DNA of 64,000 nt from assembly GCF_048593235.1 (NCBI RefSeq), contig NC_133621.1, positions 302,321,146-302,385,145 of the forward strand, read 5' to 3'. The translations under genes were made by a program, and so were the position numbers. Origin of the DNA: Sminthopsis crassicaudata. Its lineage: Eukaryota. The notes under the pieces are model-generated. The model was given only the letters and a program-made list of their open reading frames with translations, had not been told where the DNA came from and searched no databases. This document shows, piece after piece, positions 7,101-54,900 of this stretch; position 1 is the stretch's first letter, and every line of letters starts with the position of its first letter.

Positions 7101-8577
7101 GTTGGGCTGGACTGTTCTCTCAGCCTTCCTTCCTTAGCAGCCCCTTCTCTATTCGGTTTTTCTCCATAGCCCCCCCCCCCTCCAAATCTAGGTGAGGGAG
7201 GGGAAGGGCCAGTGGGGCTGCTTGGAACTCAGAGATTTGTGGGAACTCAGGGATGTGGGCAGCAGCCAAGGCAGGAGGTACTGGGGAGGGCTTCAGGCCC
7301 GCGGGCATCTAGGGAGGGCGGGAGAGAATGCCAGCCCTGCACCCGTGTCTTGTCCACTGTCCAGCAGCCACCATCTGTCATGAAGCTGCCCGCTGCTTCC
7401 CCATCAGCCACTGCCTGCTCAGCCCCCGCTTCCTTCCAGCCTTCTGTCTCTCCCCATCGCTTTCTCTTTCCCCTCCTCTCTCTCCTTCCCTCCCACTTTC
7501 CCTCTCCCCTCTTNNNNNNNNNNNNNNNNNNNNNNNNNNNNNNNNNNNNNNNNNNNNNNNNNNNNNNNNNNNNNNNNNNNNNNNNNNNNNNNNNNNNNNN
7601 NNNNNNNNNNNNNNNNNNNNNNNNNNNNNNNNNNNNNNNNNNNNNNNNNNNNNNNNNNNNNNNNNNNNNNNNNNNNNNNNNNNNNNNNNNNNNNNNNNNN
7701 NNNNNNNNNCTCTCTCCCAGCCTTCCTCTCTCCCTCCTCTCCTCTCTCCCTCTCTCTCTCCCTCCCTCCCTCCCTCCCTCCTCCTTTCCCCCCTTCACCC
7801 GCACGGCTTTTTGCTCCCAGCCTGCCTGCATGTAGGGCGCCAGCCTCATATAGCATTCTGGACCTGGGAGTCAGGAGAGCCAGGTCAAGTCCAGGTTCTG
7901 ACAGCTGGGGGAGCCTCTCTGTGCCTCGGGCTCTTCTCAGGCCCAGGCCCCCGCCTGCCCAGGGAGCCCCGCCCTGAGCCCTGGGCCCCGTATTTCCGGG
8001 GCTGGGGTGACCGGGGGGCTTGGCAGGGAGGCCACGAAGGATCCGTAGGAGAGGAGCCTGGCAGCACTGACCACTGGCCGTGACCTCTTTCTCCTGGTCC
8101 GTTCCATAGGCACCTCATCCATCAAATGTCACCTCCTTCAAGGGCTTGGAAAAATAAGTCCCAGAGACGCTAGATTGAGCAGGTCAGTGGGAAGGAGGCC
8201 AGAGCAGTGGGCCCGGAGTGCCCAAGCACCAGGACCCCGACTCCAGGGTGTCTGGCTCTCCCGGCCCGGTGCCCACTCACCCTCTCTCCCTCCGGGCCCC
8301 TCCCCCCGTGAGCTCCTGCCACCAGAACTCAGTGGCTGGCTCCCGCCTCCGGGTGCTGATGGCGGCTGGGCCTTAGGCCCAGGACTGTGCCATCAGGGCC
8401 GCTGTAGACTACAGGAGAGTGGGGGCCGGTGAGGGGGCAGCAGCGAAGGGTGGCAGGGAGTCGGGGCTCCCCAGGCCCTCACCCGCTGTCCTCCCGCTCC
8501 CCCCGCAGGGAGAAGGCGTCCTTCCTCCAGCGCCAGCCTCCCCCCGCCCCGCTGCCGCCGCCGCCACCACCGAATGA
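1146..8577 (+). CDS. SEPTIN3: Neuronal septin-3, 5'-partial (upstream exons lie before the window). Exons 1146-1227, 1653-1790, 2367-2484, 2800-2895, 3244-3343, 5772-5823, 6861-6954, 8509-8577 (TGA)
   Basis: The spliced translation [47 protein letters not shown]...HCCLYFISPTGHS|LRPLDLEFMKHLSKVVNIVPIIAKADT...|VRKELEVNGIEFYPQKEF...|QESMPFAVVGSDKEYQVNGKRVLGRKTPWGIIE|VENLTHCEFALLRDFVIR|THLQDLKEVTHNIHYETYRARRLNDNGGLPP|GEGVLPPAPASPRPAAAAATTE* matches recalled human SEPT3 isoform A nearly residue for residue. G3 (DTPG) and G4 (AKAD) motifs are present. All introns are GT-AG and phases are consistent. Confidence 0.97.
7514..7709. other. Assembly gap (196 N) inside a TC-rich tract
   Basis: N run. Confidence 1.
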
Positions 8578-25687: not shown

Positions 25688-25835
25688 NNNNNNNNNNNNN
25701 NNNNNNNNNNNNNNNNNNNNNNNNNNNNNNNNNNNNNNNNNNNNNNNNNNNNNNNNNNNNNNNNNNNNNNNNNNNNNNNNNNNNNNNNNNNNNNNNNNNN
25801 NNNNNNNNNNNNNNNNNNNNNNNNNNNNNNNNNNN
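25688..25835. other. Assembly gap (148 N) next to a GA-rich microsatellite
   Basis: N run. Confidence 1.
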
Positions 25836-33938: not shown

Positions 33939-36500
33939 TCACAACCAGGGGCGCTTCTTTCCGACCATGGGGTTCTCCAGGTCCATGATGGGGTACAGGA
34001 ACCACATGACCACGCCCGATGGGTTGATGACCACAGTGATGTTGGTGTCCACCGTGAGCCCGCTGATAATGCCCCCTGTGTAGACATCCTCGGCCTGGCA
34101 GGAGAGAGGGCGAGCGTCAGGACCCAGCACGGGGTCAGCGGGACCGCCCCGGGGGGACCCCGGGAGCCAGAGCTGGGACGGACGGCCCAGGCCCAAGGCG
34201 CTCCTCACCTCATACAACATGGAGTCGGTGAAATTCAGGGCCCGGAGAGAGGTCTGAAAGCGGTACGGCATGTCCACCCTGCGGCTGAAGAAGACGATGG
34301 CTTTGGCCTCCTTGGACAGCGGGCGCAGGAAGACATCGATCCTTTGTTTGGTCTGCGGCAGAGAAGCCGGAAGCGGCTCAGCCCCCCACCTGCCCAGCTC
34401 TGGCCGGCCTGGGGGCCTCCTTCAGGGCTGGGAGAGGTCTCCCCAAGAAGAGGAAGGACGGCTGGGGAAGTATGGCCAAGCCCCCGTGGGTGGGTACAGG
34501 GCGCTTACTTCCCAAGGGGGCCCCCACGCTGCTCCGCCCGGCCCCCTCCATCCGCGGCAGTGCCCCCGGCTGCCAGCTCCCAGCCAGCCTTCTCATACCG
34601 TGAGGACCCTGCGCCCCTGGATGCCCAAGGGATCCTGGTTAATCTTAATCATGAGCTTGTTCTGTAGAATGTCCACGTTCTGAGGCGAGATGGCGCGGAG
34701 GTCCGTGGACATGAAGAGAGGGGCGGCGAAGATCGTCCAGAGGGCCATCTGCGCTCTGGCCTGCTCAAAGCTCAGGCCGTAGTTCCCTATGAGCAACTGG
34801 GGAACGGAGAGAGGCGGACCCCGAGTCACTCAGGCGTGGGCTCGAGCACCGTTCCCCCCCCCCCCCCCCACGGCCCGCCTGGGCCCTCCCCCGCACCCAC
34901 CCCTACCATGTCCGGGTCGTTCCAGTGGCCGGGGCCTGCCACGGACTGCAGCACATCCTGGTGCTCCGTGTACCAGTCCACCACGGAGAGGACGCTCTCC
35001 CACGAGTCCTGGATGTCATCAAAGTTACGCCACAGGTTGCATATTTCTATCAGCAGGGTATAGTTCACCTGGAAATCAGCAGCAGCCAGGTGAGCCAGGT
35101 GGGCCAGGTGGGCCAGGTGAGCCAGGTGGGCCAGGTGAGCCAGATGGGCCAGGTGGGCCAGGTGGGCCAGGTGGGCCCTCCTGGTCCGCAGGAGAGGATG
35201 CACCACAACCCCCCCCCATCCCAACCCCACAGGGATCTGGAGCCCCTTTCTGCTCAGGCTGGACCCTCTTAGCCCCATCATCCCAGGGGCCTCCCCTTGG
35301 TCTCTGTCCTGCTGAGGGCTCAGGGGGGGGAAGGGGAGACCCACCTTAGGGGGGAGACCGTCATCGTAGGCCGGCCAGCTGCAGGAGTAGGCAATGGGGC
35401 GGCCCGTGGCATTCAGGGCTCTGGCCATCTTAGGGTACCCTGCAAAGGGACGAACACCCTGTCACAGAAGTTCCAAGAACGGGGACTGGCAAAGCCCAAT
35501 GTGCCCTGTGGTGACTGGCACGGCCGGGGGAGCCCCTAAAGGGAGGGCAGCCCTGCCCCCTTGTTTCTAGGCCAGCTCTTCCCTCAGACACTCCCCTAGC
35601 CTGGGCACCGACGGTGCAGGGCAGGCCCGGCCCCCTCCCACAAGCTTTCCCGTGGGCCCGGGCACTCAGTCACTGGCGCACCCTGGGCCCGGTCACGGAA
35701 AGACGAGTAACACCCGTCCAGCTTCAGCATGTCCACGGTCCAGTCGGCGAAGGTCTCCGCGTCCAGTTTCACCTTGTCCAGGGTGGTGCCCGGGTAACCC
35801 ATGCAAGTCTTGTTGCCCATGTCTTCGTAGATGCCCAGTTTCAGGCCGCGGGCGTGAGCCTGCGGGCGAGGGAGACAGCGGCGCTCGGGACGGCCCGGCC
35901 CGGCTGGGCCCGCCCCTCCCCCGGCCCAAGCTTACGTAGTCCGCCAGGTATTTGATGCCGTGGGGGAATCTCTCGGGATCGGCCACCAGGGCGCCATTCT
36001 CGTCCCGCTCGGGCGCCATCCAGCAATCGTCGATGTTGAGGTAGACGTAGCCCAGGTCCCTCCAGCCGTCCTCCACCAGCCGGTCAGCCATAGCCATGAA
36101 CAGGTCCTCGCTGCCCCGGCCCAAGGAGCCCGTGCTCAGACCCTCGGGGGCCAAACAAAGCCCTTCCCCAAACGCTGGGAACCCCGCCCACGGACCCTGC
36201 CAGCGGCCACCCCCTCCGGCGCCCTCCTCCCACCCCCTCCCGCGCCCTCCTCCCACCCCCTCCCGCGCCCTCCTCCCCCTGCCAGCGGCCACCCTCTCCA
36301 GCGCCCTCCTCCCCCGGCCGTAAGCCTCTCAAGCCCCCCCCCCTTGCCCACCTGACACAATTATCAGGGTCTTCCTTGCAGTTGGTGTTGCAGCGGTAGC
36401 GTTCCCAGGCCAGCCAGCCCATGGGGGGCGTCCTCAGCAGCCCGTTTTCCAGAGAGAACGCCCGGACTACCAAGGCCAGCAAGATCACCGTGAGCCTCAT
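33939..36500 (-). CDS. NAGA: Alpha-N-acetylgalactosaminidase (GH27), 418 aa. Coding exons 36500-36352, 36110-35936, 35859-35682, 35439-35345, 35068-34907, 34796-34599, 34352-34209, 34094-33939
   Basis: [37 protein letters not shown]...IDDCW...KLDGC (nucleophile)...SCSWPAY (the NAGA-type Ser/Ala specificity pair)...WRNFDDIQD (acid/base)...[10 protein letters not shown]...INQDPLG. Exon sizes 178/95/162/198/144 equal those recalled for human NAGA. Sequons NKT, NAT, NYT, NFT and NIT are present. All introns are GT-AG. Confidence 0.98.
35085..35174. repeat. 9-bp tandem repeat (GCCAGGTG[G/A]) x10 in NAGA intron 5
   Basis: Ten consecutive units counted; one variant unit is GCCAGATGG. Confidence 0.97.
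36195..36315. repeat. 23-bp C-rich minisatellite (ccaccccctcccgcgccctcctc, about 4 copies plus 2 spacer units) in NAGA intron 2
   Basis: Direct inspection. G-runs lie on the NAGA sense strand. Confidence 0.85.
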
Positions 36501-37249
36501 GGCTGAGACCTGGGGGGAGGGGGGAGCTCGAGCAGCAGGCCGGGCCGCAGCTTCTCCCCTGGGGCTCACAGGAACAGCAGCCGCCCCAACTTCTAAGGAG
36601 ACCGCCCCCCGGCCTCTAATGGTACAACTGCCCGCCCGCCCCGGCTCCAGGGCAGGGTTTTGGGGTGCACACGAATGGGGGACGAGGGGGCCTCCCAGGA
36701 GGCCCGGCCCGCAGCTTCCGGGGGAGATCCCAGGCTCCCCACACGGGGAGGGCCCCGCCCTCACGTTCCCAATTAATAACAACAGGTGCAGGACCTACTT
36801 TGTCTCAGGGACCTCTAAGCCTGGCTGGAGATCTGCAGGCACCCAACCCTCGGGCCCCCTTCCCTCCACCCTGGACGAAGCCCATCCCCATGCAGCCAGG
36901 CCCCTAAGCCCATTTTACAGAGGCTCTGAGTCTGCAGAACTTTCCCAGACTCCTCCCGCCCGAGAAGGGGAGAGAATTCCTAGGGAAGAAAAGGCGGGAG
37001 GTAGCGGTCGGGGAAGTGGGAGAGGGGGCTTGGAAACTGTCTCGTCCAGTCCCTCCCCCAGTTTTACAAGAGAGGAAACTGAGGGACGGGGAGGTTTGCT
37101 TTTGTGCGTGCCATGCGTCCGGGGCTCCCCCAACTCGGCGCGAGCCCCTGCCTTACACTAGGCTCGAAGCTCTTTTACACTCAATGCTGCAAATGTAGAT
37201 CGGCGGGCAGAGCTGGAAAGTGGACAAGACTTAGAGGAGCAGAGGGGGA

Positions 37250-38300
37250 AACTGAGGCAGGGGAGAAGTCCTGGGAGTGCTCACGGGACTCCCTCCCCAT
37301 CGCCGCGCGGTCCCGGAGCCGGGCCACTTACCTGGACAGCTGCGGCCAAACCTGCGCAGCTCTGCACCTCCGACCCCTCCGCCAGAGCCCGGGGAACGCC
37401 AGCTATTTGCCCGACACACACGTGACGCCCCCCCCCCCCCGCAGCCACCGACCAATCAGGGGAGCCCCACGGGGCGGGGTTGAGTGATGTCACCCAGAAG
37501 GCCCGCCCTCTGGGAGATCCGCCCCGCGGCCCTTCCGAACTCTCCTACTGCAAGTCCCGCCCCTCTCATGACAGGCCCGGGAGGTCCGGCCTCCGCTCCC
37601 AGCCCGGGCGGCCCGAGGTAGCACGCCCTACCCGGCGGGGGTGGGGAAGGAACGAGCGGAATGGGAGGCGGACTCGCCCTCTCCCCCCGGATGTCCCCGG
37701 GAGGGACGCGGCCCGGGGCTTCTCCCTCCGCCCTTGGATAACTATTGCAAAACAATCGGCTTCCTTGGCAAATCCATCCATTGGGCTTCTCGCGTTTGAT
37801 ACCGTTCCCCAAAGGGGGTGCCAACGTCCCAGGGCCCCGCGCGATGGAGATGAACCATGACCTAGCCCCATCCCCCGGGAGGTTTCACGGGGACTAGGCG
37901 GGACCACGCCCAGCTCTGGCTACCCCGGTTTTCCCAGCTAGCGCCAGGGTTCCGGTAGCCAGGTTCCTTCCCAGCTCTGATGCTCCCAGTTCCCAGATCA
38001 GTCAACAGGTTTTCATTTTCTCCTCTCGGCCCCGGGGCTACCAGAAAGGCACCAACCAGTCCCTGCCCTCACGGCGCTCATGGTCCTCTGGGTACTGTAC
38101 ACAGTAGGCGCAGACAGGTAAGCGGAGGTTGTGGCAGAGGAAGCCGCTGGCCACAAGGAGAGCCCAGCAAAGTTCCTAGCAGCTCGGAGATGTGAGCTGG
38201 GGACGGGAGCCGCGAGTGCTTCTGGGAAGGAGCACGAGAAGCGGCCCGGGCTAGTGCAGAGCAGCTGGCTACCCGGAGAGGGCCAGGAGAGGGCGCTCAC
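37250..38300. promoter_or_regulatory. CpG-rich divergent promoter region shared by NAGA (-) and PHETA2 (+)
   Basis: High CpG density with CCAAT and GC boxes. A + strand donor GACAG|gtaagc at 38118 probably ends a non-coding PHETA2 exon. The head-to-head layout is as in eutherians. Confidence 0.6.
37332..37400 (-). other. NAGA: Probable non-coding exon 1 of NAGA (5' boundary approximate)
   Basis: Donor TCCAG|gtaagt at 37331-37326 on the minus strand. No ATG on the minus strand in 37332-37480. A CCAAT box (37452-37456) and a GC box lie just upstream. Confidence 0.6.
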
Positions 38301-39100: not shown

Positions 39101-41685
39101 GACTTTTTCATACGGACCGTTATCATACTTGACTTTTGGAGTTTCCAGTTTTATCTCTGTTTTCTTGGCTCTCGGGCCCCTAAAGCCCTGACCCCCTGGT
39201 TCTGAGCTGCCTCCTGCCCTGACAGCCTCCATTTCCAGCCCTGCCCTTCTCTTCATAGGGTCTCTGCAGCTGTGACCCTCCAGGGGCCCCTTCCCTTTCC
39301 CATTCCGGGCCTCCGCATTTGGTGGGAGGGCCCTCCTTTGGGCTCTGCCTCCTCCTCTTCCTCCCTCTATCCAGCTGCGGAGCAAACCCCGGGTGCTTGT
39401 GCTCTGCCCAAATCAGGCAGGGCGGCCAGCCTTAGCCCTTCCCCTCAGCCGTTGCCTTCTTTCGAGCCCTCCTTCCCGCCGCCTTCTCTACCTAATGGGG
39501 ATGGGGGACTGGAGAAGGGAGACCTGAGAGCCAAAGTCAAGGTAATGCCCCACTTTCCCCTTGTGGAGTCCCTGGGTGGAGCGTGCAAGTGTGTCTTTGG
39601 GGTGGAGGGGCGCTGCCACGTAGCTTCTCCGGCAGCTCCAGAGCCTGGCCTCCTCCTCTGGCTCCCCTTCCCCCATCTGCTCTGAGGTAGGTGGGTGGGC
39701 AGCAGGAGCATGCTGGGCTCCGGGGGACCCATTCCCCAGAAGGTAGTCTCAGATCCCCGGGGTGGGGGCCAAAAGGGAGAGAGAGAGACAGAGTGACACG
39801 TGCCTGGAGTCTGCAAGTACTTGGGGGGGGGGCTTGAAGAATTACTCCCCTGGAATCCCACAATAGGAGGGACCTTGGACAGGGTCAGAGGGTGAAGCCA
39901 CTTGTGGGGCCCTGGGGATGGTGGGACCAGTGATAGCAACAAGTGGGGATAGCGGTCGGGGTGGGGACGACCAGTGATAGCAGCAGACTTGGTGTTTGGA
40001 TAACCTGGGCCCCGCCACCTTCTGGGGCTGCCGCCGCCCCCGTCTGCTTTCAGAGTGGGGATGGGCTGGGGTCAGTGTCCTCCAGGGGGCCAAACCCCTC
40101 TGTCCTCCCTGTCCCCCACCCAAGAACAGAGCGGCAGCCCAGGCCACCGGCTGGGGGAAGGGGAAGGTGCCTTTTGCTGTCAGACCAAAGTCTGAATGTT
40201 AGCTCCAGCTCTTACATTCTGGGGAAAGTGATATAAAATATTAGTGGTCACTAAACCCCAGCCCCTGACAGCCCCCTCAACGTGCTACCATCCCCCCATT
40301 AGACTGGAAGCTTCTCAAGGGCAGGGCCCGGGTTTGCCTTGCTTTGCGCTCCTAGCCCTGAGCATGGAGACTTGACATTGCTTCAATGCTTGTTGGCTTC
40401 GGGGAGACCCTGCAGTACCGTGGCACAGCCTTCCTTCAGCCCTGAGTGTGACAGAAAGAAAGCAGAGATCCTCCTGACATGCTCCTGCAGAATCTCTAGA
40501 CTCTGCATGAGATGAGAATGTCCTACCAGAATGTCATTGCTAGTGAGGGATTATAGTATTCCCTCCTTCTGCAGCCTTTGGACCTAATGGACTCAGTGTT
40601 TTTGTTTTTGTTTTATCAGCCCCAGCCTTAAAAGGCAGAGAATGAAGACTCCGGGTTATCAGAGCTGGAGGGATTCCATTTTACAGATGGGGAAATCAAG
40701 GCTGCCAGACCTTCTGCTCCCAGGAGAATGGGAGGGCTCCAGAGAGGAGGTCATAGGATTCTAGGCTTAGCACTTTGAGGGACCAGATGAGGCAAAAGTC
40801 CTCTCCTTCGTTTGACAGAAGACCCAATTGGGAGAGAGGGCCATAGCTGCTGGGTCCAAAGCAGTCCTGACCTAAGCAGGTATGCCCTAAACGCCAATCA
40901 CTCCAGGTTCTTTGAATGTCGGACAGTCCTGTCCCATTCTCCCCTTCCCTCCCCTTCCCCCCTCCCTCTGCTCTCAGGCCCCTCCTGGACTTCTAGTCTT
41001 GACCCACTTCCCGGTTTGGGCCCCATAAAACAAGGGGTTTAGCTTTGATTTTTATAAGTGAGACTTCCTTGATCCTATTGATTTTCCCATCATCCCAGGT
41101 TCTCCCATCTTTCTTCTCCTTCCCCTTCCGAGAGTGATGTCTTGTGACAGTGTCTGCAAGGACACCAGTGGCAGCCCCGACATTTGCTGCATCAAAGCAC
41201 AGCTTTTGGTTTCCATGAGAGGGGCCTTGTCCTTCAAGGGCTTACAGTCCATGTGACCCACGGGCAAATAAGCACAGTTGGGGGGGTGGGATGGGGGCAG
41301 GGTTAATCCCACCTTTACCCAAAGGGCTCTAGGAGAATTTAAGTGAGGAGGGGGGCTAAATAGAGAGCTCACACTATGTTTTCCCCTCTGTCTTTTGGGA
41401 TGTCATTCCCAGAATCCCCCCTAAAGGGGCTTCAGGGGTCTCCAAACCTACTGCCTAATTGGACAGATGGAGGGACTGAGTGATGGGCCTGAGCTCCCAG
41501 AGCCAGGACTGGGCTCCAATTCCCACATAGGCCAGAGGCGGACTCCTTTAGGGAGTGGGGGGCTGGCACCAGCTCAGCCACCTTTGTGGGGGAGGAGCAC
41601 GTCTGGTTGTGAGTCCAGCCAGCCCCAGCCCTTGCTCAGCTCTCTGGGCTTCCCCCATTTCCCCAGGGCCTTGGGAGTCGGTGCC

Positions 41686-42423
41686 ATGAAGCTGAATGAG
41701 CAGAGCGTGGCCCACTACGCTACGAGCGGCTCTCCTGCGGACCACGAGGGCTTCCTACGCTGCTGCAGCACCCCAGGGGGCCGCCAGCCCGCGACCCCTC
41801 GCTGCTGGTTTGTGCTCAAGGGGAATCTGCTCTTCTACTTCTAGGGGCAGGAGAGCCGGCCGCCCCTGGGGCTCATCGTGCTGGAGGGCTGCACCGTGGA
41901 GCTCTGCGAGGCCCCCCAGGAATTCGCCTTCGCCATCCGCTTCGATGCGCCCGGGCTGCGGCCCTACGTGCTGGCGGCCGAGGAGCAGGAGGTCCAGGAG
42001 GCCTGGGTGAAGGTGCTCTCCAGGGCCAGCTTTGGCTACATGAGGCTGCTGGTGCAGGAGCTGGAGGGCCAGCTCCACGAGCTACAGCTAAGCCTCGCCT
42101 CCCGCAGCTCAGCCCCCAGGTCCCAGGCCTGGGCCTCTGCCGGCCCCCCTCCGGATAGGCCGCCCCCCCAGCTGGAGGAGGGCGGCCCCTCGGCAGAGAC
42201 GGAAGGAGATGAGGGGGCCACAAAGCCCCCGGCTCCTGTTGGCCGGCGGCGCCCGGCAGAGAATTGGGCCTGGAGCCAGGCCTGCCTGCCCCTGAATGGG
42301 GGCGACAGCCCAGTGTCCCCAGAGACCTCCTGCTTTCCCAAGCTTCATGACTGGTACGGCCAGGAAATCATCGACCTCCGCAGGGAGTGGCTACAGACCA
42401 GAGCCCTGGGGGGTGGACTGTGA
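41686..42423 (+). pseudogene. PHETA2: PHETA2 (FAM109B / Sesquipedalian-2) single coding exon, interrupted by an in-frame TAG at codon 53 (41842-41844). Pseudogene, null allele, recoded stop or sequence error: undetermined
   Basis: Acceptor ccccag| at 41666, then gccATG at 41686: [25 protein letters not shown]...[34 protein letters not shown]...[22 protein letters not shown]...[28 protein letters not shown]...GL*. PH domain, coiled coil and the C-terminal F&H (OCRL-binding) motif are all recognisable in one frame. Gene identity is secure; functional status is not. Confidence 0.9.
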
Positions 42424-43799
42424 GGGGCCGGGAGGGCAAGAAATGGGGCTCCTGACCTCCCCACTCCCAAGAGTCGGGCTTCCCCCCCATACATTGCTTG
42501 TGGGGGCCTGGATCAGCTCCGAGGGAGCCACCCCCTCCCCCGGGACTGCCACTGTCCACAGAAAGGTGTGAGGCCCCTCTTTCTTCAGGACACAGAACTC
42601 AGGGTCCTCGGAAGAAAAGTCGGCAAGGAATGATGGCTAATGAATGGCTGGGGGGCCAGAAGGGGGCCATTGAGCAGCTCGGAACCTCAGTTTCCTCATT
42701 TGTAAAAGTAACCAGGATGGGAACCTCTTTTAACAACTCTGAATGAAGTAATAGCTGGACATGACCTGAGCAAAAGGGTAACAAGGAGACCGTTTCGCCT
42801 AGTGGCTAGGGCTTGTGATGACTCCTTTACAGATAAAGAAATTGAGGATTGGTGGAAGGGCCAAAGTCTCCCCTCAGTCAGCATCCGCTTCCTGCCCAGC
42901 AGGACAAGGAAGGCCCCAAGCCCACGGAAGGGTGGGGCGGCCTGTCTCCACCCCCCACTCAGTCTCTCCCAGGCTGCAGATGGCCGGATCTGAGTTCAGA
43001 TCCAGCCTCAGACACTGTGTGGACAAGCCTGCAGCCTGCCTCGGTTTCCCCAGCTGTAAAACTCGGTAATAGCCCCTTCATTCTGGAAGACTGTGGGTTA
43101 TCGCCCGCGGGCACAAGCACTGACCAGCTGGGGGGCTTCTCTCATTTGCTCCCCCGGGGCCCGACAGGCCGGGTCCTGGGCCTGGGTCTCCCCTGTCATA
43201 CGTCCAACTGTAAAGTTCTTCAGAAGACCCTCAGAGTGTCCTTGTGTCCTTGTTCTGAGCCCCACCCAGTGCCTCCCCGCCCCCCCCCCCCCCCGCCCCC
43301 AGGGGGCCTTAAGGTGGCAGGGCAGCGGTGGAAGATTCTGTGCAGGAGAGGTGGGGGGAGCGGGGGTTAGGAGAGGGGAGGGGGGTCCCCTGAACTTGGA
43401 GGGCAGGAAGGTCGTTCTCCTCTGCGACCTCGCAGCACGAAGCAGGCAGGGGGAGGCGGCCCCTGAGGGGCGGAGCACGTGGGGTCCCACGGGCTCTGGG
43501 ATCTCGCCCAGGCCACCCACCCAAGGGGAAAGATCACAGGGACCGGGGTCGGGGCAGAGCGACAGCCTGAGGTCGGTGCCGCTCTTACAGTCCCCGATTT
43601 ACATCCGAGGAAACTGAGGCACGGAGAGGGGGGCCTTCATCTGTCAGGCTAGGCCCCAGACTCTAGGGCGTCCCAGGAGTATCCTCCTTGCCGCTGGGCG
43701 GAGCCACACTCAGAGCCTCAGTGGCTCCTCAGTAAAATGGGTGATCCCAGCCCAGCCTCGCGCCAGGGCTCGGCTCTTTGGATGGAGTTCAGGACCGCC

Positions 43800-43835
43800 C
43801 AGGGGCGGGGTACGGCAGTCGGTGACGTCACCATG
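43800..43835 (+). promoter_or_regulatory. SMDT1 promoter: GC box plus full palindromic CRE (TGACGTCA at 43823-43830)
   Basis: GGGGCGGGG at 43802-43810 and GGTGACGTCACC at 43821-43832, about 190 nt upstream of the SMDT1 ATG within a CpG island. Confidence 0.65.
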
Positions 43836-44010
43836 CATCGGGGACGCACGCCGCCCCCGTCCTCCCCCTTTTCAAGAGCGCGCCCGCTCGGACGCGAGCA
43901 GGGGGAAAGTCCAGGAATCTCGCCGGGAGCTATCGCGAGAGCCGAGGGTGGGCGTTTTCCTCCGGGCACCGGCTGTCAGCGGTCAGGCCGTCCGTGAGGT
44001 TGGGGATAAG

Positions 44011-45381
44011 ATGTCGCTGGGAGCGGCTCGCTGGCTGGTGACGGGGACGGCCGCGCGGAGCGGGGCTCTCGGGCTTGGGCCCGCCGCGCGGAAAGCCGGG
44101 AGCGGCGTGGGCCAGGGCCCGGCCCCTTCGCGATCGCTCATCGCTACCCGCAGCGGAGCCATCTTACCCAAGCCGGCTAAAGTAAGTGAGGGGTGGAGCG
44201 AGGTAGAGCTACGGCCAATCCGCGCCAGGGACCTTGTGGGAGGGCCAATCATAGCTCCTGGCTGCGCTGATGGGCGGACAAACTGACCAATGGTGGAGGC
44301 CTCGGGGGCGTCCCGGAAGCAGTTAAAGGCGTGGCCAGAGCTGAGGACCAGGAGGGTGGTGGCCTGGGCTCCGGGCCCCAATGGGGGGCTGCGACCCCTC
44401 GGGCCGGCGTAGGTCGGGGCCATACCCCCCCACCCCCCGAGATCAGCAGTAACCGTCCAGGATGTGTTTAACGGGCCACTGGGGAAGGAGGAGTCATTCC
44501 TAATGAAGGGCATAAGGGGCAGTGGCTGGAGTCCGGAAGGGGGACTCGGGACATTGGGTAGATGTGGGATCCTGGGTGAGACTGGCCACCTCTGCCCGCC
44601 TCGGTTTCCTCATCTCTAAAATGGGGATAACGGCAGCATTGAAAAAGCAGGTGCTTTGTAACTCTTGGCCGTTTTCACTATCCCCCTCCCCCAGAATCAC
44701 TTCATTTGGCTCCTGGAAAAGGGCAAGGATGGTCCCGATTCTCAGGGAGGGTGAGGAAGGTCTGAGTGGAGTGACTTGTCCTGCCCGGCCCAAAGCCCTG
44801 TCCTGTGTCCCCACCCCCAGCTTTGGCTTGGGAGGTCAGGGGTCAGTCCCAGGTCCTTCCAGAACCATTGCTGGGCCTTGGTTTCCCTTCTCCAGGCTCC
44901 GCTTGCTGGCCAGCGGGCCCACGGCCAGAGCTGAGCATGAACAGAAGCCCTTTTTAAAGCCCCAAGGGTCAGAGGAACCATCCTGAGGGGCCCTCCTTCC
45001 TAGCAGCTGGCCACCGTGCCCAGAGCAGAGCCTGGCGGCTGTCCGTGTCCTGGGTACCTCCGGACGGGGGCCTGTTTTTAGCCTGGGGGATGCTTTCTTG
45101 AACTCCCTCCCCCCAAACGTCACCCCCTGGCCTTTTACTTCCTGGCTCACCTTGCTCCCAGCCTGGCTTCCCTGTGTGTGCAAGGATGAGGAGTTTGGGG
45201 GCTGCAGCCCCTTGTGTACCTTCCTGTGTCTCATATCCTCCAGATGTCCTTCGGCCTCCTCCGGGTCTTCTCCATTGTGATTCCCTTCCTCTATGTTGGG
45301 ACGCTCATTAGCAAGAATTTTGCCGCCCTCTTGGAAGAGCACGACATTTTTGTTCCCGAGGATGATGACGACGATGATTAG
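44011..45381 (+). CDS. SMDT1: Essential MCU regulator EMRE, 102 aa. Exons 44011-44181 and 45244-45381 (TAG), followed by a donor at 45385 to a UTR-only exon
   Basis: MSLGAARWLVTG...SRSLIATRSGAILPKPAK|MSFGLLRVFSIVIPFLYVGTLISKNFAALLEEHDIFVPEDDDDDD* has the conserved TM helix and the poly-Asp tail. Splice sites are AAA|gtaagt and ccag|ATG. Confidence 0.98.
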
Positions 45382-47880: not shown

Positions 47881-49536
47881 TCACGGGTCGTGACCAGCAT
47901 AGAACTTGGAGAGGAAATCCTTGGGTCTTGGGGGTTCCGTTTCATGGAAGAACCTCATGACGTGGGTTCGCTGCTTCCAGACTTTAATTGTCTCCTCCAA
48001 TTCCATCTTTCCCTGCACAGGGAGGGAGGTGTCAGTCACCCGCCCCCTCGTGGGGGTGGGGGGCTGGTGGCCAGGAAAATGCTTTCCTGACACATGGCCC
48101 ACACACACTGGTTCTGCCTCACCCTTCGAGATACAGAAGAGGGACAATGGGCCCGAGGGGGTTCCACCAGAATGAATATCAGGCTCACCCAGCTCTCACA
48201 CCATGGCCTGGACACACCCCCAACCCAACATGTGTCCATCACCCCCTGCTATCTCCGAACCGCTCTCTCTCTGCTGCGGTCGGTCCTGATGTCCAAGGCG
48301 GCAGTGGCTCCCACTGGCCCTCCATGCAGCTGCCAAAGTGAGGGTCCTGCAGGGAGAGGGGGCCAAGACCTGCCTTCCCAGCCCACCCCGGCCCCTCCAG
48401 GAGCTTTTCTCTTGGGCCTGGATCAAAACTAGAGACGCCTCTGCTTGAGATGACACCTCGCTGGGCCAGCCACTTTCTGCCTCAGTGTCCCCATCCCTAA
48501 GATGGGGACCACACCTATTTCCCAGGGGTGCGGTGAGGGTGCCAGACCACACTGGCAAAGTGCACGGCATCCGGTACCTTAATGACCAACAGATCCACCA
48601 CCCGCGGGTCGGTGACGTGGGCGTTCTTCATGAACATCTCTCGGACTTTGTCCCGGCCCTGCTTCACCGAGATGTCCAGCTGAAAAAGGTGCACTGGGGA
48701 CAAACGAGGTCCGGGTCAGGCGGAGCCCCAACGGCCAAGGGGCGGAGGAGACCCCCAATGCAGGCCGGGCCCACATCCGGCAACCCCCCCCACGCCGGCT
48801 CCCCCAGGACGAGAGCACTCAGCCCACGGCCGCATCCGGGCTCTGGGGGGGAGAGACGGGACTGCTGTGCCGGGACAAGGAAGGAAACAGTCCCTCCTCC
48901 CCCAGCCCGGCACTGATGCTCACTGCCCCCTCCTCTTCTTAGTCTGGTAGGTCCTGGAGTTGGGGGGAGGGCGCCCTCTACAGGAGCTCCCTGGACCTGC
49001 CTCATCCCCTCCCTGTGACTGTTTCCTACCCTGCAAAATGACATCTTCCCAGACCTGTTGCAGGGATGGGGAAACAGGGAGAGGGGGCGGAGAACGCGGG
49101 GCTAAAGTGTTTGAAGGGCCCAGGGTTCGAAAACCATTAGTGCTCCAACTGCCTGCGTGACCTCGGCCCCGTCCTTTGTTTTCCCGGGGTGTCTCTGGGC
49201 TCTTTCGCCGGGGAAGCCGCGCCTCAGTTTTCCCTCCATGAGAGCGGCATCCCCGCGGAGCCACGGGACGCCCGTCCCAGTCCCCCTTCGGCACAAACTC
49301 AGGGCCTGTCCCTTTAAGAGCGGCGGGATCACGACCTTGACGGAGAGCGCCCGCCCCGCCCCCTCCCCGCCGGACGGCCCCTCACCAGTGGTGGGCACCT
49401 CCCGGTACCAGGCCCGGTACAGCTCCCGCACTCGCCGCTTGGCTTCCTTCAGGTCCCGGCTGAAGACGGGCTTCACCGCCGTGCCCACGGCCCCTGACGC
49501 TACGGAGGCCGCCCGCCCCACACCGCTCGCCGCCAT
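47881..49536 (-). CDS. NDUFA6: NADH dehydrogenase 1 alpha subcomplex subunit 6 (LYRM6), 132 aa. Exons 49536-49386, 48693-48578, 48012-47881
   Basis: [11 protein letters not shown]...[30 protein letters not shown]|[39 protein letters not shown]|[43 protein letters not shown]. The LYR motif is present, phases are 1 and 0, and AATAAA (minus strand) lies at 47831-47836. Confidence 0.98.
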
Positions 49537-51978: not shown

Positions 51979-54900
51979 ATGGTGGTCTTGCCCTTCTGGC
52001 ACTTACTCCTTTGGGGGGGCCTTTTGCTAATGGCCGAGAACTCTCAGCACTCTTTCCCCGGGGTCACGCCCCCTAGTGTCCCCACCAGACCAGTGGCTCC
52101 GTGGCTATCTGGCCTTGATTCTCTCTCCTCCAGCTCCCACCAGTGCAGGGCGTCTCCTCCGGCCGACCCGAAGGCAGCACGGCCCAGAAGAGACCCCCGG
52201 CCCCTCCCCCACTGTGGTCCGAACTGCTTCCTAACGTCCTGTTTCCCGAGCACCCACTGACCTCTAGGGCCCCGGGGTTCCGACCTCAGACTCCTTCTTG
52301 ACCTTTGACCCCCCTTTGCGTGTCCCCCGTTTCCCAGCCTTGCTATTTCTGACACCAGCCCCAGAACGGGCTCCCATGTCCCTCCTGCTGCTTCCTCCAG
52401 GGCCCCCCATCTTTCGTCGCTTCCGAGCCTTCATCCATTGGGCCAAGCAGGTCTCTGGACGACTTCCTTCCCAGAACAAAGCCGGAGGAGGGGGCGGGGC
52501 CCCTCTCTCACCCCCGGCCCCTCCACCGGCCAAGCTTTAAGTCCACCATGAGGGCGCCTCCTCCCAGAGCCTCCCCAGGCAGGGCCGCCGGACGTGCCGG
52601 CCCAGGCCGCGGCACAGAGGTGCAGAGCGGGCCGTTCCCTCTGTCTCAGCCCCAGCTTTCCCCTTCCCCGTGTCTCGGAGCTGATCCCACCCGTCTTGGC
52701 CACTGCTCACTTGGAGACCCCTTTGGGGAATATGTTCTCGGCGCTTCAGGCTCGGGTTCAAATTCTGACCCCGCTCCTTGGCTGTCAGTTAAGGGCCCGG
52801 GCCTGCAGCTCCGTCCAGGGGCCTTTTCTTCCCCATCTGTAAGATGAGGAGCCGGACGCCCCTCTCCGGCTCTAACTCCAGTTGTGTGCCCATGATCATG
52901 TGGGGCCGAGCCCCCGGCGCTGGGAACCTTGGGGGGGGGGGCGTGCCGGGCCCCGTCACCCTCCGCTAAGGGCCCCTTTGTCCGGCCGTGGCGTGTCTGG
53001 GCAGGGCGGGGGCCGCCGTCTCCCCACCAGACTGGCGGCTCCGGGAGGGCCGAGCCCCCGCTGGGTGAGTACATGGAGATCCCCTCCCAGGCTGGCAGGC
53101 CCCGCCCGGCCTCCCCCTGCCCGGGCCGGTGATGAGGCGCCCTGTCACAAAGCCCCCCTCCGTGTGAGGTCACACTGGGGCCCCATCCTGGGAAGGGCGC
53201 CGCCCGGGCAGACTTCAGAGGCCGGCCAGCGGAGAGCCAGCCACGGAGACTTCTCACCCGGGGCCTGGCGTTTGGAATATGGTCCTGCCCGCGCTGGGGG
53301 GGCCGGCCCGCAGCTAGAGCCCGCAAGGAGCCGCGGGGGAGGCCGGTCAGTGCGCGAGCTGACATGCCCAAAGGGTAGACCCCAGACTCCGAAATCACTG
53401 AGACCCCAGCTCAGGGTGAGCAGGCTCCCCAGGCCCTCCCGGCCCTCCCAGGCCCGTGCCCCCCCCCCCGCCGTAAATCCCCAGTAGAGCCTCAGGGGTC
53501 TGCTTCCTGGGGGGCTGGCGGGGGTTCCTGTCCCAGCGGGGAACTTGCCACTAGGAAGGACGGAGCCCCCAAGTCCTGACTCCGGGTTTCTGGCCGGACG
53601 AGGGCCCTTCCCCTCCGGCCTCGGCTTCCCGTGTGGCCCGGGGAGCTCCGGGACCCCTCCCCGCTCCCAGTCTGGGACCGACGCGGCTCATAAACCTTCC
53701 CCCGAGGGGCAGGGCTTAGAGGCCCTTAAGTGGTATTGAAAAAAGAGACCTTTGGGCTCAGAGCAAGGAGACACAGGGAGACCCCCGTCCTGCTGTTAGC
53801 TCTGGGGGACCTCGGCCAAGTCACCTCCCCCAGCCTCAGTTTGCTCATCCAGAAAATGGTTATATATAATGATAATAATTGTTGTTATTATTATTATTAT
53901 TATTGTTTCTGTGGTCCCCTGAAACCTTCCTTAACCCCAAGCCACAAAGTCTCCCAGCCTGCCCAGCTAATGCCGCCCCATGATCCCCCGCCGGGCTGAA
54001 GCAGGACTCTCCCTGACACGTGGGAGCCATTTGGGAGCAAGGACTGTTGTTTCTGGGTTTCTGTCCCAGTCTTTTGAGTTNNNNNNNNNNNNNNNNNNNN
54101 NNNNNNNNNNNNNNNNNNNNNNNNNNNNNNNNNNNNNNNNNNNNNNNNNNNNNNNNNNNNNNNNNNNNNNNNNNNNNNNNNNNNNNNNNNNNNNNNNNNN
54201 NNNNNNNNNNNNNNNNNNNNNNNNNNNNNNNNNNNNNCTCCTCCCTGCACTACCTAGTCTTGAAGTTCTCAAGTCCTGGGCACCCAGACTCACAATGGCC
54301 ACGGGTGGTGGGGAGTCCTGGATTCGAATCCCATCTCTGCTACTTCCCGGCCGCCTGGGTGAATTGGGAGGAGGGGGGGAGAAGCCTCCGAGCTGCCTTG
54401 AAGCGAGGGGGGACAGATGGGTTGGCCCCCATGCCTTCCGCCCCTTCCTTATCAATAAGATGAGGAGCGGCGAGAGCCCTGAGCCCGGAGTGGACCTCCA
54501 TCAGCCTCAGTTTCCCCTCCCAGAGCGGGCGTCTCCGTGGCTTGGGTGGGGGGCCCCAGGAGACCCTTTGGGAGATGTCCCTCGCTGATTACTGGCTTTT
54601 ATAAGCGGAGGCGGGGCATGAGTGGCGGTTGGAAGGGGGTGGGGACCCCGGGGGTCCTGAGACCACATCAGCAGCCTGGCAGGCCCAACTGCGCTATTAT
54701 CGCATTAATGGTAGAATTTCTTTTTCATGTACAAATCCACTTATTCCAATGCTATTGTTCGATAGATGAAGGCAAAAAAGCTTCATAGAAGTGAAAGTAG
54801 AAATAATAGAATTTCGAACACGGCCAGTGTCCGCGGACATCGCCGAATAAAGGCTCCTCAGTGTTTTCAGGGGGAGGCAACTGGGGTTGAGTGACTGGCC

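What the first reader, a model, noticed from the sequence alone, without database searches (positions are those of the whole stretch)
41842..41844. In-frame amber stop at codon 53 of PHETA2 in an otherwise intact ORF
Seen in the sequence: ...CTC TTC TAC TTC TAG GGG CAG GAG AGC... The frame continues without further lesion for 192 codons to TGA 42421-42423 and keeps the rest of the PH domain, the coiled coil and the F&H motif (FPKLH). Established: the aligned residue in human PHETA1/PHETA2 is Glu (LFYFE / LFSFE), so one G>T change (GAG>TAG) explains it. PHETA1/2 link OCRL/INPP5B to endosomal trafficking and are partly redundant. Inference: a very recent loss-of-function allele or incipient gene loss (no secondary decay yet), or a consensus error (G>T is the typical oxidative-damage artefact). 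The stop lies in the last exon, so exon-junction-dependent NMD would not be expected. The product would be a 52-aa fragment, or a PH-less fragment from the in-frame ATG at 42040.
Basis: partly seen in the sequence, partly recalled or inferred. Interest (0 to 1): 0.72.

Follow-up and report, generated by a model that had tools for sequence, protein, structure and literature searches.

The report
Early stop in dunnart PHETA2 gene
The reference genome of the fat-tailed dunnart has one base change that puts a stop signal early in PHETA2, an otherwise well-kept gene; it is either a very young null allele or a sequencing error, and the public annotation hides it behind an improbable spliced model.

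Summary
TAG at 41842-41844 is codon 53 of a 245-codon PHETA2 (sesquipedalian-2) frame, ATG 41686 to TGA 42421-42423, with no other lesion.

The window is an exact piece of the Sminthopsis crassicaudata assembly GCA_048593235.1. The gene lies in the expected NAGA-PHETA2-SMDT1-NDUFA6 order. Tasmanian devil (two assemblies), Antechinus, Dromiciops and Trichosurus all read GAG here. The residue is Glu or Asp in 120 of 120 aligned vertebrate proteins.

On the dunnart branch the gene shows 15 synonymous against 5 replacement changes (omega 0.11, like its relatives). The stop is therefore very young, not fixed, or not real.

New points:
- RefSeq XP_074125762.1 (384 aa) avoids the stop. It uses the AG of the TAG as a splice acceptor and adds a 192-residue N-terminus that is not conserved as an open reading frame in relatives.
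- The G>T change turns GAG|G into a consensus TAG|G acceptor and makes a perfect tandem CTTCTA hexamer.

Interest is low to moderate. Earlier scan notes on other DNA of this genome report many homopolymer frameshifts and an intact third PHETA paralogue.

The parts
41686..41841 (+). First 52 codons of PHETA2, from the native start to the end of PH-domain strand 3
   Evidence: They align codon for codon with devil and Antechinus sesquipedalian-2. The start has a good context (G at -3).
41842..41844 (+). In-frame TAG at codon 53. The ancestral codon is GAG (Glu), and the changed base 41842 was the G of a CpG.
   Evidence: The residue is Glu in 115 and Asp in 5 of 120 aligned vertebrate proteins.
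41845..42423 (+). Remaining 192 codons plus TGA: the rest of the PH domain, the helical region and the OCRL-binding F&H motif. It is also the last exon of the RefSeq model.
   Evidence: Pfam PH hit at 1.1e-05 covering profile positions 40-104. The piece is 100% identical to residues 193-384 of XP_074125762.1.
42334..42369 (+). F&H motif region ([12 protein letters not shown])
   Evidence: Read. It is conserved in all nine marsupial orthologues.
41649..41666 (+). Ordinary 3' splice site of the coding exon: a pyrimidine tract with AG at 41665-41666, 19 nt before the ATG
   Evidence: In the frame this splice would give, the upstream exon has a stop four codons before its end, so 41686 is the native start.
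41826..41844 (+). Pyrimidine-rich run ending in TAG|G. The G>T change converts a poor GAG|G into a consensus YAG|G acceptor, which RefSeq uses.
   Evidence: The consensus rule is established knowledge. Its use in RNA was not tested.
41832..41843 (+). Perfect tandem hexamer CTTCTA x2, created by the derived T. The ancestral second copy was CTTCGA.
   Evidence: Read and compared.
39207..39541 (+). Conserved upstream, probably 5'-untranslated, exon with donor AAG|GTAATG. It is exon 3 of the RefSeq model.
   Evidence: It is 87-88% identical to devil and Antechinus, against 79-81% for the intron, and carries 1-nt and 11-nt indels that break any frame.
37575..37692 (+). Exon 2 of the RefSeq model. 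Its acceptor is not conserved in Antechinus.
36499..36621 (+). Exon 1 of the RefSeq model. Its ATG overlaps the NAGA start codon on the other strand by 2 nt.
   Evidence: Relatives have non-3n indels here.
42040..42042 (+). First in-frame ATG after the stop (127 codons). Weak context, and preceded by an out-of-frame ATG at 41945.
33939..36500 (-). NAGA coding region, the upstream head-to-head neighbour
   Evidence: Melibiase_2 domains; locus coordinates plus 26498.
44011..45381 (+). SMDT1, the downstream neighbour
   Evidence: DDDD domain.
47881..49536 (-). NDUFA6
   Evidence: Complex1_LYR.

Best explanation
The T at 41842 is a genuine and evolutionarily very young nonsense allele (Glu53 to stop, GAG>TAG) of the single-coding-exon gene PHETA2, carried by the fat-tailed dunnart animal behind assembly GCA_048593235.1. 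Translation from the native ATG would end after 52 residues, at the end of the third strand of the PH domain. No full-length adaptor would be made from this allele. The mRNA should largely escape junction-dependent decay, because the stop lies in the last exon. The allele would be tolerated because PHETA paralogues overlap in function (inferred). It may have drifted up in an inbred laboratory colony. Whether it is heterozygous, fixed in the colony or species-wide is open. Shown here: the lesion, the ancestral state, orthology, and the lack of relaxed constraint. Inferred: that the base is real, the fate of the mRNA and protein, and tolerance through redundancy.
For: - TAG is in frame at codon 53, and the rest of the frame is intact.
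- The codon is GAG in five other marsupial sequences. The residue is acidic in 120 of 120 aligned proteins.
- Gene order NAGA-PHETA2-SMDT1-NDUFA6 matches devil, Antechinus and human (PMC7272357).
- The dunnart branch has 15 synonymous and 5 replacement changes, omega 0.11, against 0.08 for devil and 0.11 for Antechinus. A neutral phase longer than about 22% of the branch is rejected at 5%.
- Replacements fall at variable columns.
- Local assembly quality looks good. A C7 run inside the ORF and the three neighbouring genes are in frame.
- The change is G/C to A/T, like 18 of the 21 changes inferred on this branch.
- The dunnart colony is described as inbred (PMC13408496).
- Zebrafish pheta1 and pheta2 single nulls are viable and fertile, with redundancy (PMC7272357).
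- On base rates from general knowledge, an individual genome carries tens of true nonsense alleles, and long-read consensus errors are mostly indels rather than substitutions.
Against: - No read, second individual or second assembly could be examined. The RefSeq protein derives from the same assembly.
- No dunnart gene calls from public run assemblies were found.
- Earlier scan notes list many 1-bp homopolymer frameshifts in conserved genes of this assembly, so its base accuracy is imperfect.
- The site is the G of a CpG and sits in a near-repeat. Both contexts can mislead long-read consensus.
- Long-term purifying selection (omega 0.11) argues that a null is not neutral.
Confidence: 0.55

Rival explanations
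1. Consensus error. The animal has GAG, and the T was introduced during long-read assembly or polishing, so PHETA2 is intact in the dunnart.
For: - The gene shows no relaxation at all, as expected if nothing is broken.
- The residue is conserved in 120 of 120 relatives.
- Many probable homopolymer errors are noted elsewhere in this assembly, including in genes unlikely to be truly broken (HOXA2, PCSK2, IFT22). One follow-up concluded long-read errors.
- The ancestral base is in a CpG, and the change copies the base 6 nt upstream within a CTTCTA/CTTCGA near-repeat.
Against: - The noted errors are indels in homopolymers. This is a transversion outside a homopolymer.
- The ORF's own homopolymer runs are correct.
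- On general knowledge, substitution errors that create a stop should be only a handful per genome, fewer than true nonsense alleles.
- The assembly's technology and quality value could not be established from the papers searched.
Confidence: 0.33
2. The T is real, but the gene stays productive by a new route. The change creates a TAG|G acceptor, transcripts splice from the upstream exon (donor after 39541) directly to 41845, the stop and the native start are removed as intron, and a protein like RefSeq XP_074125762.1 is made. That protein has a new N-terminus, a partial PH domain and an intact OCRL-binding motif.
For: - The RefSeq model has exactly this structure and matches the window 100%.
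- The site fits the acceptor consensus: 11 of 13 pyrimidines at -5 to -17, T at -3 replacing the disfavoured G, and G at +1.
- The donor AAG|GTAATG is conserved in devil and Antechinus.
Against: - The 192-residue N-terminus has no family hit. Its frame is broken by 1-, 2-, 4- and 11-nt indels in devil and Antechinus.
- The model keeps only PH profile positions 37-104, at 26 bits against 49 for the intact devil protein, so a working PH domain is unlikely.
- The strong ordinary acceptor lies 178 nt upstream and should be met first.
- A gene predictor forced to avoid the stop could only place an acceptor at this AG, so the model may rest on no RNA evidence.
Confidence: 0.07
3. Established gene loss: PHETA2 has been a pseudogene in the Sminthopsis lineage for millions of years.
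For: A disabling stop lies early in the protein. Paralogues may compensate (PMC7272357; scan note s1-153221, untested).
Against: - Omega is 0.11 on the whole branch.
- P(at most 6 replacements of 21 changes) is 0.0015 if half the branch were neutral.
- There are no indels in 738 nt, while neutral flanks carry about 31 gap openings per 1.7 kb against devil.
Confidence: 0.03
4. The UAG is recoded, by programmed readthrough or by A-to-I editing to UGG, so a full-length protein is still made.
For: The frame after the stop is perfectly kept. The base after the stop is G.
Against: - The 99 nt from the stop fold no better than shuffles (z +1.7, 198 of 200 shuffles fold at least as well).
- No known readthrough motif is present.
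- Relatives simply encode Glu, so there is no history of recoding.
- A kept frame is equally explained by youth or error.
Confidence: 0.02

Closest known systems
PHETA2 / FAM109B / sesquipedalian-2 / IPIP27B, PH-domain endocytic adaptor of OCRL and INPP5B
   Same: - Single coding exon and the same length as the devil protein (245 aa).
- PH domain at the N-terminus and an [12 protein letters not shown] motif near the C-terminus.
- Neighbours NAGA, SMDT1 and NDUFA6 (PMC7272357).
   Different: Codon 53 is a stop in this assembly. Every other sequence examined has Glu or Asp there.
Engineered zebrafish pheta2 (vt3) and pheta1 (vt2) null alleles
   Same: They are early premature-termination alleles of the same family. 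Single mutants are viable and fertile, transcripts are not degraded, and the paralogues are redundant (PMC7272357). This makes a tolerated natural null plausible.
   Different: The zebrafish alleles are frameshift deletions made in the laboratory. The authors found no synteny between the zebrafish pheta2 locus and the human PHETA1 or PHETA2 loci. The pheta2 mutants did show craniofacial changes, so a null is not necessarily without effect.
Segregating nonsense alleles and incipient unitary pseudogenes in reference genomes
   Same: One disabling substitution in an otherwise conserved, syntenic single-copy gene with no secondary decay.
   Different: The defining confirmation, meaning reads, other individuals or relaxed selection, is missing or negative here.
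Residual consensus errors of long-read assemblies
   Same: It is an isolated lesion in a gene under constraint. The same assembly carries many suspected one-base errors.
   Different: Those are homopolymer indels. This is a G>T transversion outside a homopolymer.
Annotation models that splice around a lesion (Gnomon-type work-arounds)
   Same: XP_074125762.1 places an intron end exactly on the stop codon and draws its N-terminus from untranslated exons.
   Different: Here the lesion itself happens to create a good acceptor consensus, so real use of the site cannot be excluded.

Membership tests
PHETA2 (sesquipedalian-2) orthologue | Best similarity to named sesquipedalian-2 proteins over the full length | tested here: met
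   96% identity to the devil protein, then eight other marsupial sesquipedalian-2 proteins. One search gives the N-terminal alignment.
PHETA2 (sesquipedalian-2) orthologue | Conserved gene order NAGA - PHETA2 - SMDT1 - NDUFA6 | tested here: met
   for dunnart, devil and Antechinus. PMC7272357 states the human neighbours.
PHETA2 (sesquipedalian-2) orthologue | N-terminal PH domain | tested here: met
   The piece after the stop matches Pfam PH positions 40-104. The intact devil protein matches 3-104. The 52 codons before the stop align to the missing strands. The domain is encoded but interrupted.
PHETA2 (sesquipedalian-2) orthologue | C-terminal F&H motif that binds OCRL/INPP5B | tested here: met
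   The [12 protein letters not shown] sequence is present and conserved in all marsupial orthologues. Binding itself was not tested.
PHETA2 (sesquipedalian-2) orthologue | Uninterrupted reading frame giving a full-length protein | tested here: not met
   TAG at codon 53.
Unitary pseudogene / lineage gene loss | Disabling lesion in the syntenic single copy | tested here: met
   There is no second copy in the window.
Unitary pseudogene / lineage gene loss | Relaxed selection or further lesions | tested here: not met
   Omega is 0.11 with no indels.
Unitary pseudogene / lineage gene loss | Lesion confirmed in reads and in other individuals or species | not testable with these tools
No independent dunnart calls were found.
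Functional 3' splice site at 41844/41845 | Pyrimidine tract followed by YAG|G | tested here: met
   The ancestral GAG|G would not fit.
Functional 3' splice site at 41844/41845 | Spliced reads across the junction 39541 to 41845 | not testable with these tools
The evidence behind the RefSeq model is not visible here.
Functional 3' splice site at 41844/41845 | Upstream coding frame conserved in relatives | tested here: not met
   Non-3n indels in devil and Antechinus in all three upstream exons. No family hit.

The most novel reading that the evidence does not exclude
A single G>T both stops the gene and creates the splice acceptor that removes that stop. Dunnart transcripts would join the conserved upstream exon directly to 41845, discard the native start and the first three PH strands, and produce a protein with a newly recruited N-terminus that still carries the OCRL-binding motif. 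In that case the RefSeq 384-aa model would be a real, lineage-specific remodelled adaptor, or a PH-less competitor for OCRL.
Probability: 0.06. Interest if true: 0.5.

Novelty: new member of a known kind. Interest (0 to 1): 0.25.

Why it matters
If the allele is real, the laboratory dunnart, an emerging marsupial model, carries a natural null of one of the adaptors of OCRL, the Lowe-syndrome phosphatase. That would be a ready-made test of paralogue redundancy in a mammal. It is also a caution for anyone using this colony for kidney, craniofacial or trafficking work.

If it is an error, it adds a substitution-type case to the assembly's known indel problems.

Either way, the RefSeq protein XP_074125762.1 should not be used as a dunnart PHETA2 sequence. 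Its first 192 residues are not conserved as an open reading frame in devil or Antechinus, and its PH domain is truncated, which would distort alignments and selection tests.

Tried and rejected
- **Reads:** No reads were seen.
- **Independent dunnart gene calls:** exact look-ups of the 125-aa ORF ending at the stop and of the 181-aa ORF after it found nothing. A word search with the 80 residues before the stop found no candidate. The 90% cluster of the devil protein holds only devil, Antechinus, the dunnart RefSeq model and three unrelated short peptides.
- **Bilby DNA as outgroup:** not on record. Dromiciops and Trichosurus were used instead.
- **Literature:** no paper links PHETA2/FAM109B to loss in marsupials. 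The method and quality of GCA_048593235.1 could not be found. The dunnart transcriptome paper has no supplements held.
- **Readthrough-promoting structure:** rejected.
- **N-terminally extended isoform through the ordinary acceptor:** rejected, because there is a stop four codons before the end of the upstream exon in that frame.
- **Bacterial promoter/terminator scan:** irrelevant to this genome and uninformative.
- **PHETA1 in the dunnart:** not checked. I held no mammalian PHETA1 query, and a reptile query was unlikely to bring the dunnart protein into the listed hits, so I did not spend the costly search.
- **Joined exon model:** I built none of my own. The RefSeq model was mapped as a stored protein and its exons were examined one by one by reference.

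Full report
**Observation.** The window reads ATG at 41686, TAG at 41842-41844 as codon 53, and then 192 open codons to TGA at 42421-42423. The piece after the stop matches the Pfam PH domain.

**Identity of the DNA.**
- The best protein match of the 192-residue piece is sesquipedalian-2 of the Tasmanian devil (245 aa, 96% identity). Eight other marsupial orthologues follow.
- The 90% cluster of the devil protein also holds sesquipedalian-2 of Antechinus flavipes (243 aa) and a 384-aa RefSeq protein of Sminthopsis crassicaudata, XP_074125762.1.
- The genomic locus of that protein, GCA_048593235.1 chromosome CM109185.1, is an exact substring of the window (26499-52423, no mismatch).
- The window is therefore the fat-tailed dunnart reference assembly. 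The RefSeq record is not independent evidence.

**Orthology.** In dunnart, devil and Antechinus the gene lies between NAGA (other strand) and SMDT1, followed by NDUFA6. These are the neighbours of human PHETA2 (PMC7272357). Only one copy is in the window. It is not a retrocopy: an ordinary acceptor sits 19 nt before the ATG.

**Ancestral state.** A codon alignment shows GAG at this position in devil (two assemblies with identical coding sequence), Antechinus, Dromiciops and Trichosurus, and TAG in the dunnart. Among the 121 vertebrate PHETA proteins aligned (one has a gap here), the residue is Glu in 115 and Asp in 5. The stop falls at the end of the third strand of the PH domain. This follows from the alignment to solved PH domains and from Pfam coverage: profile positions 3-104 in the intact devil protein, against only 37-104 downstream of the stop.

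**Age.**
- Parsimony on the tree ((dunnart,(devil,Antechinus)),Dromiciops,Trichosurus) puts 15 synonymous changes, 5 replacements and the stop on the dunnart branch. Omega is 0.11, against 0.08 for devil and 0.11 for Antechinus.
- With a background omega of 0.117, the chance of seeing at most 6 replacements among 21 changes is 0.07 if 20% of the branch had been neutral, 0.035 for 25% and 0.0015 for 50%.
- The replacements sit at variable columns, with the partial exception of A103V.
- There is no indel in 738 nt, while the neighbouring intron has about 31 gap openings in 1.7 kb against devil.
- An old pseudogene is therefore excluded. The stop is very recent, polymorphic, or not real.

**What the annotation did.**
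- XP_074125762.1 maps to four exons: 36499-36621, 37575-37692, 39207-39541 and 41845-42423.
- The last intron ends on the AG of the stop codon itself.
- The 192 residues from the first three exons have no family match.
- The homologous DNA of devil and Antechinus carries 1-, 2-, 4- and 11-nt indels in these exons, so this frame is not conserved coding sequence.
- Exon 3 is better conserved than its surroundings (87-88% against 79-81%) and keeps its donor AAG|GTAATG. It is probably a genuine untranslated exon.
- Spliced to the ordinary acceptor, exon 3's frame has a stop four codons before its end, so 41686 is the native start.
- I read the model as most likely a predictor's way around the stop.
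- I built no joined model of my own. The exons were examined one by one by reference.

**Sequence context of the change.**
- The ancestral base was the G of a CpG (TTC GAG).
- The derived T makes two perfect tandem copies of CTTCTA at 41832-41843.
- It also turns GAG|G, a very poor acceptor because of the G at -3, into TAG|G behind a run with 11 of 13 pyrimidines. The acceptor consensus is established knowledge.
- Real use of this site is therefore possible, but the strong ordinary acceptor lies 178 nt upstream.
- The repeat and CpG context fit either a templated real mutation or a consensus artefact, so they do not discriminate.

**Expected consequence if the base is real.**
- The product is a 52-residue fragment.
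- Reinitiation at ATG 42040 is unlikely. It has a weak context, and an out-of-frame ATG at 41945 opens a 21-codon frame before it.
- The RNA after the stop is no more structured than shuffles (z +1.7), so nothing supports programmed readthrough.
- The stop is in the last coding exon, so junction-dependent decay is not expected. The zebrafish pheta null transcripts were likewise not degraded (PMC7272357).

**Real or error.**
- Exact look-ups and a word search found no dunnart gene calls from public run assemblies.
- For a real allele: the locus is otherwise cleanly assembled, including a C7 run. The change is a transversion outside a homopolymer. It follows the strong G/C-to-A/T bias of this branch, 18 of 21 changes. 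The colony is inbred (PMC13408496). Single pheta nulls are viable in zebrafish (PMC7272357).
- For an error: earlier notes of this scan report many one-base homopolymer frameshifts in conserved genes of this assembly, such as HOXA2, PCSK2, IFT22 and ACP5. One follow-up blamed long-read errors. These notes are unchecked leads, but they lowered my trust in the consensus. The total absence of relaxed constraint is also what an intact gene would show.
- My odds: real allele about 0.6 (including 0.07 for the splice bypass), error about 0.33.

**Comparison and novelty.** This is either an ordinary young nonsense allele in a reference animal or an assembly error. Both are known kinds. No paper in the library connects PHETA2 with loss in marsupials. 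The useful by-products are the flag on the RefSeq model and the observation that the lesion creates a splice-site consensus. An earlier scan note (s1-153221, other DNA of this genome, untested here) reports an intact third PHETA paralogue, which would add to redundancy. PHETA1 was not checked.

**Verdict.** Interest is low to moderate (0.25).

Noticed in passing
window 41686-42420, compared with L002, L004, L005, L006: On the dunnart branch, 18 of 21 inferred changes in PHETA2 are G/C to A/T (13 of 15 synonymous). The devil branch runs mostly the other way. This suggests a lineage difference in mutation bias or in GC-biased gene conversion at this locus.
   Followed up: partly
window 36498-36501: The start codon of the RefSeq PHETA2 model and the NAGA start codon on the opposite strand overlap by two bases (CATG). 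Exon 1 of the model therefore lies antisense to the NAGA 5' end, which is a further reason to doubt that start.
   Followed up: partly
window 39207-39541: The upstream non-coding exon is clearly better conserved with devil and Antechinus (87-88%) than the surrounding intron (79-81%). It has a conserved donor but an 11-nt indel, so it may be a conserved leader exon or a regulatory element.
   Followed up: partly
window 42424-44200: No AATAAA or ATTAAA lies between the PHETA2 stop codon and the start of SMDT1. The polyadenylation site of PHETA2 is not obvious, and the two genes may share or overlap transcripts.
   Followed up: no
L002 12103-13853 and L003 12108-13857: Devil SMDT1 is called as 180 aa in both devil assemblies, but the orthologue is 102 aa in dunnart and Antechinus. 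This is probably an annotation difference at the 5' end.
   Followed up: no
protein cluster of P0001 (P0123, P0124, P0125): Three short peptides of 38-53 aa from run assemblies, unrelated in sequence to PHETA2, are filed in the same 90% cluster as the devil protein. This is an oddity of the clustering.
   Followed up: no
window 7514-7709, 25688-25835, 54081-54237: There are three N runs of unequal length (196, 148 and 157).
   Followed up: no
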